Below, piece after piece: positions 14,885 to 58,415 of a DNA stretch of 64,000 nt. The stretch is from positions 5,456,001-5,520,000 of the forward strand of contig NC_043023.1 in NCBI RefSeq assembly GCF_006345805.1, in the 5' to 3' direction. The notes below the pieces were generated by a model. The model was not told the origin of the DNA. It searched no databases and saw only the letters and a program-made list of their open reading frames with translations. This stretch comes from Octopus sinensis (taxonomy: Eukaryota). The translations under genes and the position numbers were made by a program. Numbering within the stretch: position 1 is the first letter of the stretch; each line of letters begins with the position of its first letter.

Positions 14885-16422
14885 ACCCTTTTTACTATAG
14901 GTACAAGGCCTGAAATATTGCGGGAGTGGACTGGTCAATTACATCGACCCCCAGTGCTCAACTGGTCCTTATTTTATCAACCCTGAAAGGGTAAAAGGCG
15001 AAGTCGACCGTGGCAGAATTTGAACTCAGAACACAAGGACAGATGCAATGCCACAAAGCATTTTACCCAGCACGCTATCAATTCTGCCAGCTCACAAGGT
15101 CACGAAGCCTGAAATTTGGGGTCAGGGGGATAAAAGGGTAAAGACCCCCTTCAGTTATGAAGGGCCATGGGATTGCACCTAGAAAGTTCCCCTCTGAGGC
15201 ACAAGTCCAGGCAAGGTTGTTTATGGAAGACCAGCAATCGCCCATGCATACCAGCCTCCCCTCTCCGTGCCACCAATGTTATCCAAGGGAAAGGGCAAAG
15301 GGGTCGATACACCTTGGCACCTGTGATGTTGCAATTCATTTCTACAGCTGAGTATATTGGAGCAACGTGAAATAAAGTGTCTTGCTCAAGAACACAACAT
15401 GCAGGTTAGCCCGGGAATCGAACTCACTACCTCATGATTGTGAACCTGATGCTCTAACCACTGAGCCTGACCCCAGAGCTCAACTGCTACTTTATTTTAT
15501 TGACCCCAAAAAAGTGAAAGGCCTCAGTGGAACTTGAACTCAGAGCATTAAGGAGTTGCAAAAATTGTATCTCAGCATTTTGTCGGACATGCTAATGGTT
15601 CTGTCAGCTTGCCCACCATAACCCTTTCGTTACCGTATTTATTTTGAGATGTTCTGTGTTTCTTTCAATTACTTTAAATATAACAAAGAATTCAGTAAAA
15701 TAACTTAGTTATCATTCAGCTAGTGTTAGAAACATGAATTGTAACTAAGGTTTGGTGGAAGATTTTAATTCAGAACTTATGGAAACAAGACATTTCTACA
15801 AGGAGCCAGAGCTGGTTTCAGCCAGGTTGGTAACAAAAGGGTTAATAATAGTTTCAAAATTTTGGTACAGGGCCAGCAGTTGAGGGGATGGGATGTTGAC
15901 TACATTGGCCCCAGTATTTGGCCGCTACTTATTCTATCAACCACCAACAGGATGGAAGGCAAAGTTGACCCCAACAGAATTTGAGAATGTAAAGATGGGG
16001 CAAAATGCAGCTAAGCACTTTGTCTGATGTGCTAACGATTCTGTCAGCATGCTGCCTTGTATGAATATAATTACTGGTTTCAAATTTTGGCACAAGGTCA
16101 ACAGTTTTGGGGGAGAGGGTAAGTTGACAGCATCAACACCAGTGCGCAACTGGTACTTCTTTTATCAACCCCGAAAGGATGAAAGGTAAAGATGATCTTG
16201 GTAGAATTTGAACTTAGAATATAAGGACAAAGAAAATACTGCTAAGAATTTCGCTTGTCATGCAAACCATTCTTATGTCTTGACTGCCCACAAGGGGCTA
16301 AACACAGAGGGGACAAACAAGGACAGGCAAATGGATTAAGTTGATTATATCGACCCCAGTGTGTAACTGGTACTTATTTAAACTTATTGACATGCTAACC
16401 ATTCCGCCAACTTTCCACCTTA

Positions 16423-16454
<32 letters not shown>

Positions 16455-16670
16455 CCTTTCTACTATAGGCACAAGGCCTGAAATTTTGGGGAAGGGGGTT
16501 AGATGATGACCACAATGACCTCAGTGTTTTCACTGGTACTTGTTTTATTGACCCTGAAAAGATAAACGGCAAAGTCAACCTCAGTGGAATTTGAACTCAG
16601 AACAGAAAGATGGACGAAGTATCACTAAGAATTTTGCCAAGCATGCTAATGATTCCGCCAGCTCACTGCC
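14885..16670. mobile_element. Cluster of decayed family B SINEs (gccgaggtcgactttgcctttcatcc core) with a family D SINE (15130-15467) and a piggyBac-like MITE (15619-15845)
   Basis: Repeated gaaaggatgaaaggcaaagtcgacc..aatttgaactcagaa; family D head accactgagcc; MITE ends AACCCTTT..AAAGGGTTAA. Confidence 0.75.
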
Positions 16671-17089
16671 TTTTTAATAATAATAATTGTTTCTAATTTA
16701 GGCACTGGACCAACAATTTTTGAGGGAAGGGATTTGTCAGCTGATTACACCGATCCCAGTATATGACTGGTACTTTATTTTAGCAACCTCGTAATGGATG
16801 AAAAGCCAAGTTGCTCTCAGCGAGGCTTGAACATGGGACATAAAGATCCAGGAGAAACACGAAGAATTCTTGCAATGCTCGACCGATTCTATCAATCCAC
16901 CGCTTCATGGACGCTCCTAACACGACAGAAAATCTACAGGAAATGAGAGAGAGGTATAGAGGCGATCATATACATGTGAGGACCCATGGCTGTGGGTTTA
17001 GGGTGTTGCAAATCTTGAGAGTAAGATTGTGATCTTGATTCCTCAACTGGGCGTTGCATTGTGTTCTTAATGCTAAATAAACACTTTTT

Positions 17090-17289
17090 ACTTGTTTCTG
17101 TCATTTGACTGCGGCCATGCTGGAGCACCGCCTTTAGTCGAGCAAATCGACCCCAGGACTTATTCTTTGTAAGCCCAGTACTTATTCTATCGGTCTCTTT
17201 TGCTGAACCGGTAAAGTAGCGGGGACGTAAACACACAACCATTGGTTGTCAAGCGATGTTGGGGGGGACAAACACAGACACAAAAACAT

Positions 17290-17323
<34 letters not shown>

Positions 17324-17680
17324 TAGACAAGCTTCTTTCAGTTTCTGTCAACCAAATCCACTCACAAGGCTTTGGTCTGCCTGAGGCTATAGTAGAACAC
17401 ACTTGCTGAAGGTACCACGCAGTGGAACTGAACCCGCAACCATGTGGTTGGTAAGCAAGCTACTTACCACACAGTCACTCCTACGCCTATACATACATAC
17501 ATACATATATATATATACTCTTTACTCCTTTTACTCGTTTCAGTCATTTTGACTGCGGTCATGCTGGAGCACCGCCTTTAGTCGACCAAATTGACCCCAG
17601 GACTTATTCTTCGTAAGCCTAGTACTTATTCTATCAGTCTCTTTTTCCGAACCACTAAGTTACGGGGACCTAAACACATG
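17090..17680 (-). mobile_element. Family A SINE plus partial second copy
   Basis: Full reverse-complement element 17090-17490; tail fragment 17520-17680. Confidence 0.8.
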
Positions 17681-17809
17681 GTGAGAATTTACAAAATAAC
17701 AAAAGATGAAAATGGGTGTGTATGTATATTAATATACGTATATATGTGAGTGTGTATATATATATATATATATATATGTGCATACAGACCCCGCCTTAAT
17801 ATATATGTT

Positions 17810-18030
17810 TCTTTATTACCCACAAGGGGCTAAACACAGAGGGGACAAACAAATGAATTAAGTCGATTACATCGACCCCAGTGCGTAACTGGTACTTAAT
17901 TTATCGACCCCGAAAGGATGAAAGGCAAAGTCGACCTCGGCGGAATTTGAACTCAGAACGTAACGGCAGACGAAATACGGCTACGCATTTCGCCCGCCGT
18001 GCTAACGTCTCTGCCAGCTCGCCGCCTTAG
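17810..18030 (-). mobile_element. Family B tRNA-derived SINE, near intact
   Basis: Head aaggcggcgagctggcag..gagttcaaattcc; tail cccacaaggggctaaacacagagg. Confidence 0.85.
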
Positions 18031-18971
18031 TACTTAATATATAGACCCCATCACAGAAATTGACAGCTACAGTATTTCATCGGCCCCTGCAGAAAGGATA
18101 AAAGGTAAGATAAATTCGACTTTGACAGGGCTGGAATTTGATTTCTAATATAGGAGCAAAGGAGGAAGGACCTGAGGGCTTTTAAATAGAAAAGGGACCC
18201 CAATTGATTATTGATTACACAGACCCCTAAAACTCCTTGTGGTAATTTTCCTTCGTTTTTAATTCATCAGTCAGTCGAATCTACAGATGGATAGGAATAA
18301 AGGGTCAAGTGATGTTGGTGGATCTGGGTTAAAATACAAAAGACAAACACACAAAGAGGGATGACATGAACTAAACACCACAAGGTATTTTCTCGGAGGC
18401 TTTACTGATTTATCAGTACAAATATTTGTGAAGGGTGAGGGTAAGATTTTAGTTTGATACAAGGGTGCTGGAATGGGATGGGAAACAAGTGAACTGAGAG
18501 CGTAACGGGGGAAGGGTTAGGGCCCCGAATCTTACCCCACTCCCGAAGGACAGGGGTAACAAAGATAGGTGGAGGAGGGGAGTGCCCGGGAGGAGATAAA
18601 ATATATGCCCCGCCGTCATCGCCACTGCCACCTCCATGTGCTGAGCTCAGAAACCTCCCCTTCCAACCCAACCTTCTAACCCTGACCCCACCCCCACCAA
18701 TAATCGATTCCCTACACTTTTGCACAGCCATCGACCTTGGCCAACACAACCACCACCATTACTAGGGTCTTCACATCATAATCATCATCCACCACCACCA
18801 CCATCAAAATCATCCCCTATAACAATCATCATCATCATCATCATGGTCCTATTTGTTGTTACCTCCAACACCACCATCAAAACCATTAGCTACACTATCA
18901 TCGCCACCACCACCATCGTTGACACCATCACTATCTCATCACCATCACTACCATCATTATCACCATCACCA

Positions 18972-20518
18972 TCACCCGGACTGTCCGTCCTCCCTGTTCC
19001 GGAAGAACCCCTTCCCGGTTGTGCACTCCCGGACAGTAACGGTGACCTTGTTGGACGTGACGTCGGTGATGAACACTTGGTCAAGTAAGGGTTTGACATT
19101 GGGCGGTGGGCACCAGTAGGTCCTCCGCTCGGGGCCTGTCCCTCCTCCACCCACACCGCCCATCGTTGCGCCCCCGACCCCGCCGGCTCCGCCGCCGCTG
19201 CCAGGGCCGCTCTTGTTTTCGGTGTCTGTGCCGTACTCCAGCCCATCGTAGCTGCCGTCCCTCTCCCTCTCTCTGTCCCGATCGCGGTCCCTCTCTCGGT
19301 CCCGCGACACAAACGAGATCCGCTTGCCGGACTTCTCGGATCCGTGCCGACCGGATGAGGACATCGTGTCCTCGTGGCCGTCCTGCAGCTGACCGAGAAC
19401 GGCCCGAGACTCCCCGCTGCCAACACCGCCACCGCCGCCCACGCCAGTGCACATGCCCCCACCGACACCCACACCGCCACCTGGGGCGTTGCTGCCGCCA
19501 CCGCCGGTAGCACCACCTCCACTGCCCCCTCCACCACCGCCGCCATCTTTGCTACACTTGTGGTGGTGGTGGTGGTGGTGGTGATGGCGGTGGTGCTCCT
19601 TATGCTCTGCCCGTTCACCGCTGATGCTGTCGTCATGGCCGCGGACGCGGAGGTGGGGCTGGCAGCGGTCGTCGACGACGCGGATCCCGTCGACACCCCT
19701 GACGACGACCCCACGCCAACACCGGAGCCCTTGTCCTGCTTGCGCATCGTGTGGTGCGTTACGTTCCCCGTGGATTTTATGACTGATGAGGGCCGGTTGG
19801 AGGAGGAAGTCGAGGACAGAGACTTCGCGGAGGCATTTGACAAGGAAGAGGATGAGGTGGAGGTGGAAGAGGAGGTGACACCCAATGTGGTTCGGTTCTT
19901 TGGGGGTCTACCTGGGCCCCTCTTCACAGGAAGGTGGTGCACCTGAAGTGAGGAGCTGTGTGACCCACTTGGGTTCGCGTCCATTAACCCGCCACTTGAT
20001 CTCTCACTGGTCTTACTGCTGCTGCGATGTGCCCCGCCACACGCCCCCCCTCCGCCACCAGATGTGTTGTTGCTATTACTACTATTACTGCTGCTGTTGT
20101 TGTTGTTGCTGCTGCCTGCAGTCATTTTGTCGTCGAGTCCCTTGTGGGACGATGGCCGCTCCCTGTCTCTCTCCCTCTCCCGCTCTCTCTCCCTCTCTCG
20201 GTCCCGGTCCTTGCGGCCGACGTCCGGAGGAGGCGGAGGGGGAGGCGGAGGAGGGGGCACAGCCGGCAGGCCTCTGTAGGTGTCGCGGGGCCGGTATTTG
20301 CCCGACGCCGCACCCTCGTTGCATGCACTGGTCGATGAGGACGAGGCCGAACCGGTCGAGGAAGTCGTGTTGTTGTTGTTGTTGTTGCTGCTGTTTGTGG
20401 TGGTGGTCGTGGTCGAGCCACACAGGCCCTGGTCGATGTGACTGACTGACTTCCGTCGGCAAGGAGGACTTTCCAGCTCCAGGTCCGAGCCATCTCCAGT
20501 GTCATCTGTTGCTGAATC
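18972..20518 (-). CDS. Pc: Pc/CBX terminal exon 5: low-complexity region, AT-hook (19898-19924), Pc box (~19002-19118); contains an apparent 1-nt frameshift
   Basis: Acceptor tttcccttttctttgtag|GAT. Frame open through poly-P, RE/RD, KRGPGRPPK. Pc box YWCPPPNVKPLLDQVFITDVTSNKVTVTVRECTTGKGFF lies in the -1 frame. Length 1547 nt is not a multiple of 3. Confidence 0.85.
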
Positions 20519-20729
20519 CTACAAAGAAAAGGGAAAGATATAAGCTTTTGTTAGCATCAGAAGAATTTAGGGGTTATTCTACTTCACTTTTGTATCTGGT
20601 TTGCAAAGCACCTTATGTGAATTTGTGTTGGGAACAAATTTTGTTGTATCTGGGGAGAGTTTTACTGCTTTAAGGTAACACACTCAGCAATTTAATTTCC
20701 ACACATTTATTTATTCCAGAAAACTTTGT

Positions 20730-21126
20730 CGTTGCTGTTTGTTTGTTTGTTGAGCGAAGCGGTCTTCGTCCCAGAGCTCGCAAGATCGCGCCTCTGTAGT
20801 GGGAGAAGTCCGGAACGTGGTCCTTTGCTATTCGTAAGACCCGCAGAAGAGAAAGCAGGTCAACCCCCGACACCGAGAGCATCGACAGATGGATGAATGC
20901 GCATCCAGGCTCAGCGGTTGCGTAGGAAGTCGGGGACAAGAAACAGGAAAAAAGAGTGAGAGAAAGTTGGAGCGAAAGAGTACAACAGGGATCGCTACCA
21001 CCCCCTGCTGGAGCCTCGTGGAGCTTAAGGTGTTTTCGCTCAATAAACACACACAACGCCAGGTCTGGGAATTGAAACCGCGATCCTCCGACCGCGAGTC
21101 CGCTGCCCTAACCACTGGGCCATTGC
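20730..21126 (-). mobile_element. tRNA-derived SINE (tRNA-Arg-like head)
   Basis: gcaatggcccagtggttagggcagcggactcgcggtcggaggatcgcggtttcaattccc followed by a non-tRNA body. Confidence 0.75.
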
Positions 21127-21339
21127 ACATCTACTGTTGTTGCTGTATCAATGGATTTTGACTCTAAATAAATGAGTGGAAATTCAACTGGTGAGTGTGT
21201 TATACTATGGCACTATGACTCTCCTCAGACACAACAAGAATTTTGAGGTTACAGGAAATTTTGCTGTAAATATTTTTGTCATACAAAAATAATTCACTGC
21301 AAGAAATTTCATTTGAAATGACCTCAACACATTTGTTTA

Positions 21340-21800
21340 ATATTTGATGTTGAATAAACACTTGCTTACTTAATGTTTTTTTAATAACTTTTTATCATTC
21401 TGTTTATTTTCAAACATTTGAATAAAGGTGCCTAATTTAATGTTTTTATGTCTTTCGTCACTCTGTTTTATATTTTAAAATATTTGAATAAAGACTTGTT
21501 CGTTTAATGCTTTTATAAAACTTTTCATCATTCTTTTATTTTATAAAATTTGAATAAAGACTTGTCCGTTTAATGCATTTTTATAACTTTTTGTTATTGC
21601 TTTTTATATAATAAAATTTGAATAAAGACTTGCCTATTTAATGTTTTTATAAAACCATTCATCATTCTTTATTCTGTGAGTAAAGACTTGTTAGTTTTAA
21701 TGCTTTTATAAAACCTAACCTTTTTAATTTAAAAATATTTGAATATTGACTTGTCTATTTAATACTTTTATAAAAAATTATTATCATTCTTTCCCTTTAT
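21340..21800. repeat. AT-rich minisatellite, ~65-bp period, ~7 copies
   Basis: tttgaataaagacttg..tttaatg..tttata at ~21352, 21420, 21486, 21552, 21620, 21680, 21741. Confidence 0.85.
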
Positions 21801-22244
21801 TTTAAAAAGATGCTGATATAATTCACATTATCATTGTCCATGCAATGAATTTATCTCACAGCAAATTATCCTATACAGCAAAATTTCGTAAGGTAAATTC
21901 CCCAAACACATAACTTATAAACATTCAACGGATCATGAAATGACTGTTTCGTGACAGGGGATTTAGAAATAGATGTTAAAACTATTTAAAAAAAGTGTTT
22001 AAATATTAGTTTCACATTTTGGTATACATACATGCAAAAATGATAAAACAAGATGTATTAAAGTCTTTTTTTATGAATTCCATGTGCACTAATGGATTCC
22101 CACATGAGTATCCAGTAAAAGAATTCCTGCTGTATCATAGCACATGGTGTCTAATTCCTGAAGAGGACCTTTGAAAAGCACACTATAAGTTTTTTTACCC
22201 ATACATACACAGATATATAAATACAGACACAAACATTTATATAT

Positions 22245-22790
22245 ACTCTTTTACTCGTTTCAGTCATTTGACTGTGGCCATGCTGGAGCACCGCCTTTGT
22301 AAGCCTAGTACTTATTCTATCGGTCTCTTTTGATGAACCGCTAAGTTACGGGGATGTAAACACACCACCATCGGTTGTCAAGCGATGTTGGGGGACAAAC
22401 AGACACACAAACATATACACACACATACATCATCATCATCGTCATCGTTTAGCGTCCGCTTTCCATGCTAGCATGGGTTGGACGGTTCGACCGGGGTCTG
22501 GGAAGCCAGGAGGCTGCACCAGGCTCCAGTCTGATCTGGCAGTGTTTCTACAGCTGGATGCCCTTCCTAATGCCAACCACTCCGTGAGTGTAGTATACAT
22601 ACACACATATATATACATATATACAACAGGCTTCTTTCAGTTTCTGTCTACCAAATCCACTCACAAGGCTTTGGTCAGCCCGAGGCTATAGTAGAAGATA
22701 CTTGCCCAAGGTTCCAGGCAGTGGGACTGAACCTGGAACCATGTGGTTGGTAAGCAAGCTACTTACCACACAGCCCCTCCTGCGCCTATT
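22245..22790 (-). mobile_element. Family A SINE interrupted by an RTE 3'-end insertion (22432-22592)
   Basis: SINE tail 22245-22430 and head 22625-22790 separated by a (CAT)n RTE tail module. Confidence 0.8.
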
Positions 22791-23071
22791 TTTATACATA
22801 TATTTTGTGTAGGTAGTTATGGTAAATCCCAGCTGTTGTCTCTCTCTCTTTTCTTCCTTCATTAGGGTCATCTGTGCTGGTCCTAATTATTGTCTAAATA
22901 TAAACAATTCATCCAAATGTAAAATTTGTATTATTTAATTTCTCTGTCTGAAGAATTTCTAACAGGGAATTCCTTACATGTCCACCTAACATATACAATT
23001 TTGTAACCCCTATTAGGGATCTTTACCTTTTGACCAACAGATTTTAAAAACAATTTTTTGTAACTAAACAC

Positions 23072-23554
23072 TTTCAAACTTTAGACACTGGTAGAATATG
23101 TCATATAAAACATCTTTTACTCTTAGCGTTTTTGAGAAAAACTTATATTTACAAAGTTATATTTACAAAGTTATTTCATGTTAAAGTTGTCGTATTTTGG
23201 TAATTTCAACCAATCAATGATGTGTATTCAGCTGAATAAAATTACTGCCATTGTTTGTCACTGTTATTTATGACATCGTTTGTGCGTTTGTACTGGTTTT
23301 AGCTTTAAGGTTTTAGGGTTAGGGTTAGGGTTGTCATAAATAACAGTGACAAACAAAATATACACTGCTGATAGTTCTTGTTGACAAACAGTGGCAGTAA
23401 TTTTATTCAGCTGAACACACGTCACTGATTGGTTGAAATTACTGAAATAGGACTACTTTAACATGAAATAACTTTGTAAATATGTTTTTCTTAAAAACGC
23501 TAACAGTAAAAGATGTTTTGTATGACACATTCTACTAGTGTTTGAAATTTGAAA
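23072..23554. mobile_element. Foldback element with ~180-bp inverted arms and an inner 22-bp perfect inverted repeat
   Basis: Arms 23072-23260 / 23383-23554; tttgtcactgttatttatgaca / tgtcataaataacagtgacaaa; (TTAGGG)3 in the loop. Confidence 0.85.
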
Positions 23555-23649
23555 TTAGGGAGAATTTGACTGAGATGAAGCTGAAAGATGAAGACAGAAA
23601 TAATAAAATAGAGAGGAGAGGAATGAGGGGAATGGGGGGGGATACTTAC

Positions 23650-23713
23650 TTGTAGTTTTACTCGCTTGGGTCTTGGGCCTTTTTTGTGTGGGAGGACATC
23701 TTTGTCAGTCTGA
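23650..23713 (-). CDS. Pc: Pc/CBX coding exon 4 (64 nt), (S)QTDKDVLPHKKGPRPKRVKLQ, AT-hook-like motif
   Basis: Acceptor gtttttccctattacag|, donor |gtaagt; phase 2 in, phase 0 out; KKGPRPK is like the KRGPKPK motif of CBX proteins. Confidence 0.88.
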
Positions 23714-23871
23714 CTGTAATAGGGAAAAACAAGATATCTTTGGTTTAGTAAAGGACCACATACAAAAGAAATGAGAGAGGGAAAGAGAGCAGGAGAGAGA
23801 GAGAAAACAATAGGGAAAGAGAGAATAGAGAGAGAAAGGAAAAGTAGAGTTATTATATATATATATATATA

Positions 23872-26458
23872 GGGAATTGTATCAGACTGCCAAAAGAGAA
23901 GCTAGGAGACAGGTTTATTTAGCCAGAGGGGAAGCAGATAAGAAAAAATTTGCCAATGTTCTGCGCCGTGAGGACCAAAGACTGGAGGTGTTTCGTGTTG
24001 CAAGACAGTGTGTGAGAGAGAATCGTGATGTGGTAGGAGAGAAGTGTGTTCGCATGGAAGATGGTTCACTTGCGCTAAATGAGGATGCAAAGAGAGAGGT
24101 TTGGAGATGCCACTATGAAAGGTTGCTGAATGAAGAAAATGAATGGGATAAAGGGAGTCTGCCGAATGTTGACCCAACAGAGGGACCAGCTATCCGAGTT
24201 GATAGTTCTGTGGTAGCTAAGGCAATTAGAAGCATGAAGACAGGGAAAGCCCCAGGCCCATCAGGAATCACTGCAGAGATGCTCAAAATGTCTGGTAGTG
24301 TCGGCTATAGCCTAGTCACCCATATAGTAATCAGGTGATACACAAGGGGTCATACCCAATGACTGGTGTAGCAGTATAATAGTCAACTGCTACAAAGGTA
24401 AAGGTGATGCCCTAGATACAAATAACTACAGAGGTATCAAGCTGTTGGACCAGGTGATGAAGGTTACGGAGAGGGTCATAGCCCAACTAATTAGAGAGAG
24501 AGTTAGTTTAGATGAGATGCAGTTTGGGTTTGTGCCAGGGAAAAGTACTACTGATGCTATATTCCTGGTAAGGCAGCTGCAGGAGAAATACCTAGCCAAA
24601 GATAAGCCCCTGTACCTGGCTTTTGTTGACATGGAGAAAGCCTTCGACAGGGTCCCCCGATCCCTTATCTGGTGGGCAATGAGAAAACTAGGGATAGATG
24701 AATGGTTAGTGAGAGCTGTGCGGGCCATGTATAGGGACGCCGCTAGTAGGGTGAGGGTTGGAAATGAGTACAGTGAAGAATTCCGGGTAGAGGTAGGGGT
24801 CCACCAAGGCTCAGTACTCAGCCCCCTCCTATTTATCATAGTCCTCCAGGCAATAACGGAGGAATTCAAGACAGGATGCCCTTGGGAGCTCCTCTATGCT
24901 GATGACCTTGCTCTAATTGCTGAGTCGCTATCAGAACTGGAGGAGAAGTTTCAGGTGTGGAAACAAGGATTAGAATCGAAGGGCCTCAGAGTCAATCTAG
25001 CTAAAACCAAAGTCGTAATCAGTAGGAAGGTAGACAAATCACAAACACCTTCAGGTAGATGGCCCTGCTCGATCTGTAGAAAAGGTGTAGGTAGAAACTC
25101 TATAAGATGCACCAAGTGTAAGCTATGGACACATAAGAGATGCAGCAATGTCAAAGGAAGGCTAATTAGGAAGATGGTTTTTGTATGTGGCAGATGCTCA
25201 GGAACAATAAACACTGAAAATGCTCTGAGACCAACTTCCATCACTTTCCAGGGAGAAAAACTAGAAATAGTTGATAGTTTCCGTTACCTAGGTGACCAAG
25301 TCAGCAGCGGGGGCGGGTGTGCTGAAAGTGTAACTGCTAGAGTAAGAATAGCTTGGGCAAAGTTCAGAGAGCTCTTACCTCTGCTGGTGACAAAAGGCCT
25401 CTCGCACAGAGTGAAAGGCGGACTGTATGATGCGTGTGTACGAACAGCCATGCTACATGGCAGTGAAACATGGGCCGTGACTGCTGAGGATATGCGTAAG
25501 CTCGCTAGAAATGAAGCCAGTATGCTCCGATGGATGTGTAATGCCGGTACTCACACTCGGCAGAGTGTAAGTACCTTGAGAGAAAAGCTGGACCTAAGAA
25601 GCATCAGTTGTGGTGTGCAAGAGAGACGTTTGCGCTGGTATGGTCATGTGGCGAGAATGGATGAAGATAGTTGTGTGAAAAAGTGCCACACCCTAGCGGT
25701 TGAGGGAACCTGTGGAAGAGGCAGACCCAGGAAAACCTGGGACGAGGTGGTGAAGCACGACCTTCGAACTTTAGGTCTCACTGAGGAAATGACTAGAGAC
25801 CGAGACCTCTGGAAGTGTGCTGTGCGCGAGAAGACCCGGCAGGACAAGTGAGTCCACAACCCGTGGCCTTCTACATGGGATGGAGCCAGCCTACGTATGC
25901 ATACCTTCCCTTCTTGGGACACAAAACTCTACTTGTGAAGACGTGTTGAGGCAAGTGAGGATCAGAATCGAAATCGATCAATGGAAATTGCGGATGTGCT
26001 ACCAGTGCCGGTGGCATGTCGAAACTCTGCTTGTGAAGACCCATTGAGGCAAGTGAGGATCAGAATCGAAATCGATCAATGGAAATCGATCAATGGAAAT
26101 TGCAGATGTGTTACCAGTGCCGGTGGCATGTAAGAGAACTTTCCGTTTCGCGACCGTTGCCAGCACCGCCCCGTTTCGTGTCCGTTGCCAGCCTCGCCTG
26201 GCCCTCGTGCCGGTGGCACATAAAAAGCACCATCCGTTCGTGGCCGTTTGCCAGCTCTGTCTGGCACCAGTGCGGGTGGCACGTAAAAAGCACCCACTAC
26301 ACTCACGGAGTGGTTGGCGTTAGGAAGGGCATCCAGCCGTAGAAACACTGCCAGATTTGACTGGGCCTGATGAAGCCTTCTGGCTTCACAGACCCCGGTA
26401 GAACCGTCCAACCCATGCTAGCATGGAAAACGGACGCTAAATGATGATGATGATGATA
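23872..26458 (+). mobile_element. Young 5'-truncated RTE-clade LINE (RT, PHD-like finger, 3' UTR, (ATG)n tail), antisense in Pc intron 3
   Basis: ORFs 23877-24338 and 24445-25851: KTGKAPGPSG, QFGFVPGKST, FVDMEKAFDRV, GVHQGSVLSP, LLYADDL, FRYLG, RLRWYGHV, GRGRPRKTW; (TA)n on both flanks; tail atgatgatgatgatgat. Confidence 0.95.
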
Positions 26459-26599
26459 TATATATATATATAGATATATATATATATAATTAATAATATC
26501 AGGGTAATAAAGATTTTAGAAATCTTTACTACCAGTGTCCTAGCATATTAAAAAATTAGTCAATAGACTATATATTATTCATATAAAATACAGTTTACG

Positions 26600-26992
26600 T
26601 TTAAACACATTAAGGTTTCCATCATAGGAATGCTTTACGCTAGAAAGAACAGCTGAAGTCCAAACCACTAATTATTGATAAATTCTCAAAGGGAATGAAA
26701 AATAAAAACATTTACCATCTATCTCCTGGACCATGGTTTCTGACTTATTTTACCAAATAAAATAATTTACTAGGCGAAATCTTCTGGATTGGCCTCGCGT
26801 TTATATGTTTAATCTAGGCGTCCCTGTTGAAGAAGACTTCGCCTAGCAAATTATTTTATTTGCTAAAATAAGTCAGAAATCATGGTCCAGGAAAGAGATG
26901 GTAAATGTTTTTAATTTTCATTCCCTTTGGACTTCAGCTGTTCTTTCTAGCGTAAAGGATTCCTATGATGAAAACCTCTTAATGTGTTTAAA
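26600..26992. mobile_element. Foldback element with ~160-185-bp inverted arms
   Basis: Arms 26600-26785 / 26831-26992, e.g. gctagaaagaacagctgaagtccaaa vs tttggacttcagctgttctttctagc. Confidence 0.85.
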
Positions 26993-27029
26993 TGTACATT
27001 GTATTATATATATATATATATATATATAC

Positions 27030-27400
27030 ATCATTGTCCATGCTGGCATGGGTTAGACAGTTTGATCAGCAAGCTGAGGGGCTGCACCAGACTCCAATCT
27101 GATTTGGTATGGTTTCCTACGGCTAGATGCCCTTCCTAATGCCAACCACTCTGAGAGTGTAATGGGAGCCAGTTGCGTGACGCCAGTATCTGCCACGATT
27201 ATGATTTTACTTGGTTTGATGGGTCTTCTTCTCAAGCACAGCATATTGCCAAAGGTCTCAGTCATTTGTCATTGACTCCGTGAGGCCCAATGTTTAAAGG
27301 GTGCTTTTTATGTGCCACCAGCACAAGTGTCAGAGTGTGACACCAGCAATGGCCACGTCTTCTAAACCACGGCACTTTGCCAAAGGCCTTGGTTCATTGT
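27030..27400 (-). mobile_element. RTE 3'-end copy, diverged
   Basis: ccatgctggcatggg..gatgcccttcctaatgccaaccac. Confidence 0.75.
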
Positions 27401-29045: not shown

Positions 29046-29111
29046 CTGCTTTTAAATGCTTCTATTAATCGCAAATCCAATATATTTTCTTCTGGTTCCC
29101 AGGTGTTATAT
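29046..29111 (-). CDS. Pc: Pc/CBX coding exon 3 (66 nt), (K)YNTWEPEENILDLRLIEAFKS
   Basis: Acceptor ctatttcag|, donor |gtaat; TWEPEENILD signature; phase 2/2 fits neighbours. Confidence 0.95.
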
Positions 29112-46008: not shown

Positions 46009-46052
46009 TTAGGTGACCATCCTTTCCATTTAACGTAATATTCCACTTTACC
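46009..46052 (-). CDS. Pc: Pc/CBX coding exon 2 (44 nt), GKVEYYVKWKGWSP(K)
   Basis: Acceptor ttctttattgtttccag|, donor |gtaagt; chromodomain core VKWKGW; too short for the ORF track. Confidence 0.95.
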
Positions 46053-58346: not shown

Positions 58347-58415
58347 CTTACGAATACGTCGTTTCTGGATACATTCTGCTGCAAACACTCTGTCCCCCAT
58401 ATTCGGAAGTTCCAT
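58347..58415 (-). CDS. Pc: Pc/CBX coding exon 1 (69 nt), chromodomain N-terminus
   Basis: ATG at 58415, [23 protein letters not shown], then donor AAG|GTAGGT; resembles CBX starts such as MELSAVGERVFAAE...KRRIRK. Confidence 0.95.

What the first reader, a model, noticed from the sequence alone, without database searches (positions are those of the whole stretch)
18890..19910. Pc terminal exon needs a -1 frame change; two frames stay open for ~940 nt
Seen: the spliced frame runs DSATDD..AT-hook..TTTTTTTTS, then becomes nonsense-like and stops at 18890 without a Pc box (~623 aa). The -1 frame is stop-free from 19907 to 18972 and holds SKDGGGG..Pc box. One extra base near 19554-19556 (agt gt agc) repairs it (~596 aa). 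Upstream of that point both frames look protein-like (poly-T versus EHKEHHRHHHHHHHHHK; Drosophila Pc has poly-His). Known: the Pc box binds RING1, so a box-less protein would read H3K27me3 without joining PRC1. Most likely an assembly deletion (the young RTE also shows two 1-nt deletions near 24330-24345); alternatives are a null allele, a cryptic intron or recoding.
Basis: partly seen in the sequence, partly recalled or inferred. Interest (0 to 1): 0.75.

Follow-up and report, generated by a model that had tools for sequence, protein, structure and literature searches.

The report
One missing base splits octopus Polycomb
The Octopus sinensis Polycomb gene looks frameshifted only because this assembly lacks a single G that the sister species O. 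vulgaris has, so this is almost certainly a sequence or annotation error rather than recoding, and the public protein model is wrong.

Summary
The spliced frame gives 623 aa with no Pc box, and a second frame is open over 19907-18972 and holds the Pc box. The window is Octopus sinensis GCA_006345805.1, and the 623-aa product is exactly RefSeq XP_029652203.1.

The orthologous exon of O. vulgaris is 99.4% identical and is one uninterrupted 514-codon frame. The only frame-changing difference is one G between window 19602 and 19601 (minus strand, GCAT[G]AAGG). The real reading is therefore NGQS-MKEHHRHHHHHHHHHKC-SKDGGGG, poly-His and not poly-Thr.

All four substitutions downstream are synonymous in the Pc-box frame. 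The shift zone has no slippery heptamer and no plausible intron. Cuttlefish transcripts and genome are single-frame.

Two more 1-nt gaps, both on the O. sinensis side, break a retrotransposon ORF 5 kb away that is intact in O. vulgaris.

The best explanation is a 1-nt consensus deletion in the PacBio-based assembly (about 0.85). A real allele (about 0.1) cannot be excluded without reads. The gene is an ordinary Pc/CBX ortholog. The useful outcome is an annotation correction, because both public octopus models of this gene lack the Pc box.

The parts
58347..58415 (-). Exon 1 coding part (MELPNMGDRVFAAECIQKRRIRK), start of the chromodomain
   Evidence: tblastn with chromodomain probes and splice reading. 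Identical at nucleotide level in O. vulgaris.
46009..46052 (-). Exon 2 (GKVEYYVKWKGWSPK), chromodomain
29046..29111 (-). Exon 3 (YNTWEPEENILDLRLIEAFKS), end of the chromodomain
   Evidence: Pfam Chromo 62.6 bits over residues 12-59.
23650..23713 (-). Exon 4 (SQTDKDVLPHKKGPRPKRVKLQ)
19602..20518 (-). Terminal exon, first part, read correctly in the annotated frame (DSATDD ... AT-hook ... RPSSVIKSTGNV ... AVNGQS)
   Evidence: Aligns to cuttlefish P0001 residues 82-262 in this frame. Collinear with the O. vulgaris single ORF.
19892..19924 (-). AT-hook KRGPGRPPKNR
   Evidence: Read directly. Conserved in cuttlefish and other molluscan CBX proteins.
19601..19602 (-). Site of the missing base. The window reads GCAT|AAGG and O. 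vulgaris reads GCATGAAGG. This is the only frame-changing difference in the exon.
   Evidence: blastn and MAFFT alignment of the window against L006
19554..19601 (-). His-rich block (M)KEHHRHHHHHHHHHKC encoded by a (CAC)n tract. The annotated frame misreads it as IRSTTAITTTTTTTTSV.
   Evidence: O. vulgaris single ORF reads NGQSMKEHHRHHHHHHHHHKCSKDGGGG
18972..19601 (-). Terminal exon, second part, true reading frame (Gly-rich tract, ESRAVLGQLQDGHED, RD/RE repeats, Pc box, stop at 18974-18972)
   Evidence: Aligns to cuttlefish P0001 residues about 270-375. 4 of 4 substitutions against O. vulgaris are synonymous in this frame.
19017..19115 (-). Pc box / CBX C-terminal motif (…LLDQVFITDVTSNKVTVTVRECTTGKGFFRNR)
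   Evidence: Pfam PF17218 CBX7_C, 45.3 bits. Matches the CBX7 C-box chain 3gs2_B.
18890..18971 (-). Spurious tail and stop (18892-18890) of the annotated 623-aa product XP_029652203.1. This is really 3' UTR.

Best explanation
The locus is the ordinary single-frame Polycomb (Pc/CBX) gene of Octopus sinensis. Its parts are a chromodomain in exons 1-3, an AT-hook, low-complexity Ser/Thr, His and Gly tracts, and a C-terminal Pc box in one large last exon.

The deposited assembly (GCA_006345805.1, built from PacBio long reads) lacks one G between window 19602 and 19601. The annotation pipeline therefore ran on in the wrong frame and produced a 623-aa box-less protein, XP_029652203.1.

No frame change happens in the animal. 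The real protein is 596 aa and reads ...AVNGQS-MKEHHRHHHHHHHHHKC-SKDGGGG...Pc box.

Shown here: the base is present in O. vulgaris, the exon is a single frame in O. vulgaris and in cuttlefish, and the downstream frame is under constraint.

Inferred: the absence of the base in O. sinensis is a consensus error and not a true allele.
For: 1. Identity. The 623-aa product is exactly XP_029652203.1 on CM016885.1 of GCA_006345805.1. The assembly paper's title names PacBio sequencing plus Hi-C (reference list of PMC10700109).

2. Sister species. O. vulgaris diverged about 2.5 Mya (PMC10700109). Its locus L006 is collinear with the window, and exons 1-4 are identical at nucleotide level. The terminal region (2,002 aligned positions) is 99.4% identical. 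The exon is one 514-codon ORF ending in the Pc box. The only frame-changing difference is the extra G at GCAT[G]AAGG.

3. Constraint. The four substitutions downstream of the gap (19365, 19278, 19268, 19257) are all synonymous in the Pc-box frame and all non-synonymous in the annotated frame. The synonymous fraction of possible changes is 0.249, so all four being synonymous has p of about 0.004 under no constraint.

4. Cuttlefish. Ortholog P0001 is encoded in full (377 aa) as one frame on three independent Logan contigs. Its genomic last exon is also one frame. P0001 has NGQSGKDG contiguous where the octopus frames meet.

5. Neighbouring gaps. Within 18-26 kb there are only three 1-nt gaps between the species, and O. 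sinensis lacks the base in all three. The other two (24328, 24345) break a reverse-transcriptase ORF that is an open 674-codon frame in O. vulgaris. That element has only 4 substitutions in 2 kb.

6. Domains. Pfam finds CBX7_C only in the second frame, and there is a CBX7 C-box match in PDB 3gs2.
Against: - No O. sinensis reads or transcripts were available, so the base has not been seen in O. sinensis itself.
- The gap is not in a homopolymer (G flanked by T and A), which is not the most typical long-read error context.
- Across the whole 56 kb alignment, 1-nt gaps are roughly balanced between the two assemblies (70 against 62). They show no clear GC bias. There is therefore no window-wide signature of O. 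sinensis-specific deletion error.
- The four synonymous changes could predate a very recent real deletion.
Confidence: 0.85

Rival explanations
1. A real 1-nt deletion allele in O. sinensis. It could be heterozygous in the sequenced animal, polymorphic, or recently fixed. It would encode a Pc protein with chromodomain and AT-hook but no Pc box, which could read H3K27me3 without joining PRC1.
For: The assembly as deposited lacks the base. The context is not a homopolymer. 1-nt gaps are not obviously one-sided over the whole window. Nothing here shows the base in O. sinensis.
Against: The downstream Pc-box frame is fully intact, with 4 of 4 synonymous differences from O. vulgaris. A fixed loss older than a very short time is therefore unlikely.

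The Pc box is conserved from cuttlefish to vertebrates. From general knowledge, Pc-class loss of function is severely deleterious in Drosophila and mouse, so the prior for such an allele in a reference animal is low compared with a residual indel in a long-read consensus.

Two more same-direction 1-nt gaps lie 5 kb away in another ORF.
Confidence: 0.1
2. Programmed recoding: a -1 (or +2) ribosomal frameshift, or transcriptional slippage, joins the two frames on a genuinely G-less mRNA.
For: Two frames overlap for about 940 nt. The wrong frame stays open for 209 codons past the junction, which happens in only 2% of codon shuffles.
Against: Homology confines the junction to 19610-19553, and that zone contains no X XXY YYZ heptamer. 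The in-phase heptamers lie elsewhere: at 19919, at 19904 inside the AT-hook (a shift at either would lose conserved frame-1 residues), and at 19094.

There is no A or T run that could support slippage. O. vulgaris and cuttlefish encode the protein in one frame, so no recoding arrangement is conserved. The upstream overlap is open in 27% of shuffles.
Confidence: 0.01
3. A short cryptic intron (length 2 mod 3) inside the terminal exon restores the frame.
For: 688 GT...AG pairs of suitable length exist in this GC-rich stretch.
Against: None of them combines a donor matching at least 7 of 9 consensus positions with a pyrimidine-rich acceptor. O. vulgaris needs no intron there, since the same sequence plus one G is a continuous ORF. 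Any such intron would also delete residues present in the O. vulgaris protein.
Confidence: 0.01

Closest known systems
Polycomb / Pc-class chromobox proteins (Drosophila Pc; vertebrate CBX2/4/6/7/8). The nearest relative found is Acanthosepion pharaonis 'CBX8' (P0001, 377 aa).
   Same: N-terminal chromodomain (Pfam PF00385), AT-hook KRGPGRPPKNR, and a C-terminal Pc box (PF17218) matching the CBX7 C-box crystallised with RING1B (3gs2). Five coding exons, with one large last exon. The terminal-exon alignments to P0001 are 41-48% identical, interrupted by long low-complexity gaps.
   Different: The octopus protein is about 220 aa longer than the cuttlefish one. The extra length comes from low-complexity insertions (Thr/Asn/Ser, Pro, RD/RE, His and Gly tracts), including the His block at the junction that cuttlefish lacks. 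In this assembly the box is out of frame by one base.
Residual single-base indels in long-read consensus assemblies that propagate into RefSeq gene models
   Same: There is a single-base gap relative to a 99.4% identical sister-species exon. The annotated product runs into nonsense-like text. More same-direction 1-nt gaps lie nearby in another ORF. The assembly was built from PacBio reads.
   Different: The gap is not in a homopolymer, and raw reads could not be examined here.
Programmed -1 ribosomal frameshifting (the type seen in retroviruses and coronaviruses, and reported for a few cellular genes)
   Same: Only the bare geometry matches: the functional C-terminus lies in the -1 frame, with a long overlap.
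   Different: There is no slippery heptamer at the junction and no conservation of the arrangement in relatives.

Membership tests
Pc-class chromobox (Polycomb/CBX) proteins | N-terminal chromodomain | tested here: met
   Pfam PF00385, 62.6 bits (cut-off 25.1), residues 12-59 of the spliced product. The aromatic positions F11, W32 and W35 can be read directly in GDRVFAAE...KWKGW.
Pc-class chromobox (Polycomb/CBX) proteins | C-terminal Pc box (CBX family C-terminal motif) in the same reading frame as the chromodomain | tested here: inconclusive
   The motif is present: PF17218, 45.3 bits, at 19115-19017, with a match to PDB 3gs2_B. In the window it is one base out of frame. In O. vulgaris it is in frame (44.1 bits). 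Whether it is in frame in O. sinensis depends on reads that could not be reached.
Pc-class chromobox (Polycomb/CBX) proteins | AT-hook or AT-hook-like motif between the chromodomain and the Pc box | tested here: met
   KRGPGRPPKNR at 19924-19892. It is identical in cuttlefish P0001, and similar motifs occur in the Haliotis and Solemya homologs.
Pc-class chromobox (Polycomb/CBX) proteins | Binds H3K27me3 and the RING1 subunit of PRC1 | not testable with these tools
   This is biochemical. It is inferred only from the conserved motifs.
Programmed -1 ribosomal frameshift sites | Slippery heptamer X XXY YYZ in the zero-frame phase at the point where the frames must join | tested here: not met
   No such heptamer lies in 19610-19553. 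The in-phase heptamers lie at 19919, 19904 and 19094, outside the zone allowed by homology.
Programmed -1 ribosomal frameshift sites | Two-frame arrangement conserved in related species | tested here: not met
   O. vulgaris has a single 514-codon ORF. The cuttlefish genome and three contigs that each encode the full protein are single-frame.
Programmed -1 ribosomal frameshift sites | Stimulatory downstream RNA structure | not tested
   This was not pursued because the slippery-site and conservation criteria both failed.
Assembly consensus indel | Raw reads of the same individual contain the base that the consensus lacks | not testable with these tools
   There was no access to reads. Exact look-ups of the mended 596-aa protein and of the O. 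vulgaris 595-aa protein found nothing in the collection. A scan of metagenome contigs for the junction found nothing.
Assembly consensus indel | A close relative has the base and an intact ORF, and further same-direction 1-nt gaps occur nearby | tested here: met

The most novel reading that the evidence does not exclude
The G is truly absent in O. sinensis, or in one haplotype of the sequenced animal. That would be a natural Pc allele that keeps the chromodomain and AT-hook but loses the RING1-binding Pc box.

A related possibility concerns a chromodomain-only short isoform. The O. vulgaris annotation contains a 108-aa model that splices out of the big exon at window 20450 to a distal exon at about 10023. 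Octopuses might therefore normally make box-less H3K27me3 readers.
Probability: 0.07. Interest if true: 0.5.

Novelty: not a real feature. Interest (0 to 1): 0.12.

Why it matters
As biology it is ordinary: octopus has a canonical Polycomb gene. The value is practical.

Both public octopus models of this gene lack the Pc box. One is RefSeq XP_029652203.1, named 'uncharacterized protein DDB_G0271670'. The other is O. vulgaris CAI9743318.1, only 108 aa. A domain-based survey of PRC1 in cephalopods would therefore wrongly score octopus as lacking a canonical Pc/CBX subunit.

The corrected 596-aa (O. sinensis) and 595-aa (O. vulgaris) products restore it.

The case also gives a concrete, checkable example of single-base gaps in GCA_006345805.1 that break ORFs.

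Tried and rejected
**Homology searches**
- (mended 596-aa query) returned no Octopus protein. The 90% cluster that holds XP_029652203.1 is represented by a 108-aa sequence, which falls outside the length filter.
- (C-terminal 194 aa) was swamped by Gly-rich words and gave nothing.
- (248 aa across the junction, O. vulgaris reading) found only the cuttlefish protein.
- The exhaustive representative search gave only distant Pc-box hits (best 1.6e-12) and no octopod.

**Exact look-ups and scans**
- Look-ups of the mended O. sinensis protein, the O. vulgaris 595-aa protein, and two internal-Met versions all returned 'not in the collection'. No independent Octopus transcript contig could be fetched.
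- A scan of JGI metagenome contigs for the junction, with or without the extra base, gave 0 hits.

**Mechanisms tested**
- Slippery-site and cryptic-intron scans were negative.

**Assembly-wide error signature**
- I tested whether 1-nt gaps are one-sided or GC-biased across the whole 56 kb alignment. They are not: 70 against 62, with similar local GC. The 'systematic deletion error' argument therefore rests only on the local cluster at 18-26 kb.

**Literature**
- A search for octopus Polycomb papers found nothing relevant.

Cuttlefish has AGTGGCAAAGACGG there, which would imply a 2-nt insertion. The O. vulgaris alignment rejected it.

Full report
**1. What is in the sequence**

On the minus strand there is a five-exon gene, and all its introns are GT-AG.
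- Exon 1: 58415-58347
- Exon 2: 46052-46009
- Exon 3: 29111-29046
- Exon 4: 23713-23650
- Large last exon entered at 20518

Splicing fixes the frame of the last exon (codon starts at 20599-3k). In that frame the product is exactly 623 aa. It reads DSATDD..., then the AT-hook KRGPGRPPKNR (19924-19892), Ser/Thr-rich text and a Thr run, then Ala/Val/Arg-rich nonsense-like text, and stops at 18892-18890.

The frame one base upstream (codon starts at 20600-3k) is stop-free from 19907 to its stop at 18974-18972. It ends in ...PERRTYWCPPPNVKPLLDQVFITDVTSNKVTVTVRECTTGKGFFRNREDGQSG. Adding one base gives 596 aa.

Pfam sees only Chromo (62.6 bits) in the 623-aa product. It sees CBX7_C (45.3 bits, cut-off 22.2) in the second frame. 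The box also matches the CBX7 C-box chain of PDB 3gs2.

**2. Is the double-open frame special?**

Mostly it is not. The exon is 64% GC.
- In 5000 codon shuffles the upstream overlap (101 codons) is open 27% of the time.
- The 209 codons of the annotated frame past the junction are open 2% of the time.

The second figure is mildly unusual, but nothing supports it being functional.

**3. Where the window comes from**

The 623-aa product is on record verbatim on CM016885.1 of GCA_006345805.1. It is RefSeq XP_029652203.1, 'uncharacterized protein DDB_G0271670 [Octopus sinensis]'. The annotation pipeline therefore followed the genome through the wrong frame.

**4. Relatives**

*Cuttlefish.* The best homolog is Acanthosepion pharaonis 'CBX8' (P0001, 377 aa). 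By tblastn it aligns to the annotated frame for residues 82-262 and to the other frame for about 270-375. The ortholog therefore truly needs both frames.

P0001 is encoded in full as one frame on three independent Logan contigs. Its genomic last exon is also one frame. Cuttlefish reads NGQSGKDG contiguously. In octopus, NGQS is in one frame at about 19610 and SKDG is in the other at 19553. The junction must therefore lie in that 55-nt zone.

*O. vulgaris.* The decisive comparison is with O. vulgaris, which diverged about 2.5 Mya (PMC10700109). I reached its locus (L006, GCA_951406725.2 OX597842.1) through the 108-aa cluster representative P0263.
- The locus is collinear with the window.
- Exons 1-4 are identical at nucleotide level.
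- The terminal region is 99.4% identical over 2,002 aligned positions.
- The O. vulgaris last exon (L006:46105-47649) is one uninterrupted 514-codon ORF running from DSATDD through the AT-hook to the Pc box.

Within the coding part the two species differ by six substitutions, one in-frame 3-nt repeat-length change (20385-20387), and one single base. O. vulgaris has a G between window 19602 and 19601, GCAT[G]AAGG.

The true reading is therefore ...AVNGQS-MKEHHRHHHHHHHHHKC-SKDGGGG.... The (CAC)n tract encodes His, not Thr.

**5. Constraint**

The four substitutions downstream of the gap are at 19365, 19278, 19268 and 19257. All are synonymous in the Pc-box frame and all are non-synonymous in the annotated frame. 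Only 24.9% of possible single changes there are synonymous, so four out of four has p of about 0.004 without constraint. The Pc-box frame has been the translated frame during the divergence of the two species.

**6. Alternatives**

- *Recoding.* No X XXY YYZ heptamer lies in the zone that homology allows. The in-phase heptamers are at 19919 and 19904 (inside the AT-hook, upstream of conserved frame-1 residues) and at 19094. There is no A/T run for slippage. Relatives are single-frame.
- *Cryptic intron.* None of 688 GT..AG pairs of length 2 mod 3 has a reasonable donor together with a reasonable acceptor. O. vulgaris also needs no intron.
- *Real allele.* This cannot be excluded, because no O. 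sinensis reads or transcripts were reachable.

**7. Error or allele**

For error:
- The assembly was built from long reads.
- The downstream frame is perfectly preserved.
- In 18-26 kb the only three 1-nt gaps between the species are all on the O. sinensis side.
That ORF is an open 674-codon frame in O. vulgaris, and the element has only 4 substitutions in 2 kb.
- Three same-direction frame-breaking gaps against 10 substitutions in two ORFs is far from a natural indel-to-substitution ratio.

Against error:
- The gap is not in a homopolymer.
- Over the whole 56 kb alignment, 1-nt gaps are balanced (70 against 62) with no GC bias.

I put error at about 0.85, a real allele at about 0.1, and everything else at about 0.02. 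The remainder is unassigned.

**8. Verdict**

This is an ordinary Pc/CBX ortholog whose apparent frame change is most probably a one-base consensus deletion.

The useful product is an annotation correction. XP_029652203.1 (O. sinensis) is mistranslated after residue 390, the S of AVNGQS. CAI9743318.1 (O. vulgaris, 108 aa) is truncated by a different model choice. The correct proteins are 596 and 595 aa, with chromodomain, AT-hook, His tract and Pc box.

Noticed in passing
window 20450 (GT donor inside the last exon, after ...PPCRRK) and window 10023-10008 (distal exon ATTACTCAGAATGTAG); L006:46105-56837: The O. vulgaris annotated product CAI9743318.1 (108 aa) splices out of the big exon to a distal mini-exon about 10.4 kb downstream, giving chromodomain + K-LLRM*. 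Donor, acceptor and mini-exon are identical in the O. sinensis window. It may be a real chromodomain-only isoform or an annotation artefact. As a result, neither public octopus model of this gene contains the Pc box.
   Followed up: partly
window 23829-25848 (+), gaps at 24328 and 24345; L006:40750-42771 (-): There is a non-LTR retrotransposon (Pfam RVT_1, 113 bits) in intron 4. The orthologous O. vulgaris copy has one open 674-codon frame. The O. sinensis copy is split into 169 + 506 codons by two 1-nt gaps 17 nt apart, with only 4 substitutions in 2 kb.
   Followed up: partly
window 15619-27348 compared with the rest of the window: Divergence between O. sinensis and O. vulgaris is very uneven. 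It is 0.2-0.4% across the last exon, intron 4 and the retrotransposon, but about 2% just 3' of the gene, and other alignment blocks are only 88-96% identical.
   Followed up: no
window 20385-20387 and 20034: There is an in-frame (AAC)n length difference (Asn6 in O. sinensis, Asn5 in O. vulgaris) and one Gly/Val replacement. These are the only protein differences between the two species apart from the frameshift.
   Followed up: yes
window 18890-19601, annotated frame: The wrong frame stays stop-free for 209 codons past the junction, and a further 27 to its stop. This is seen in only 2% of codon shuffles. No function is suggested. It is why the pipeline could emit a long plausible-looking product.
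   Followed up: partly
window 19374-19946 and 19885-20445 (+ strand): Long antisense ORFs (190 and 186 aa) overlap the GC-rich exon. They are low-complexity and look like a by-product of composition.
   Followed up: no
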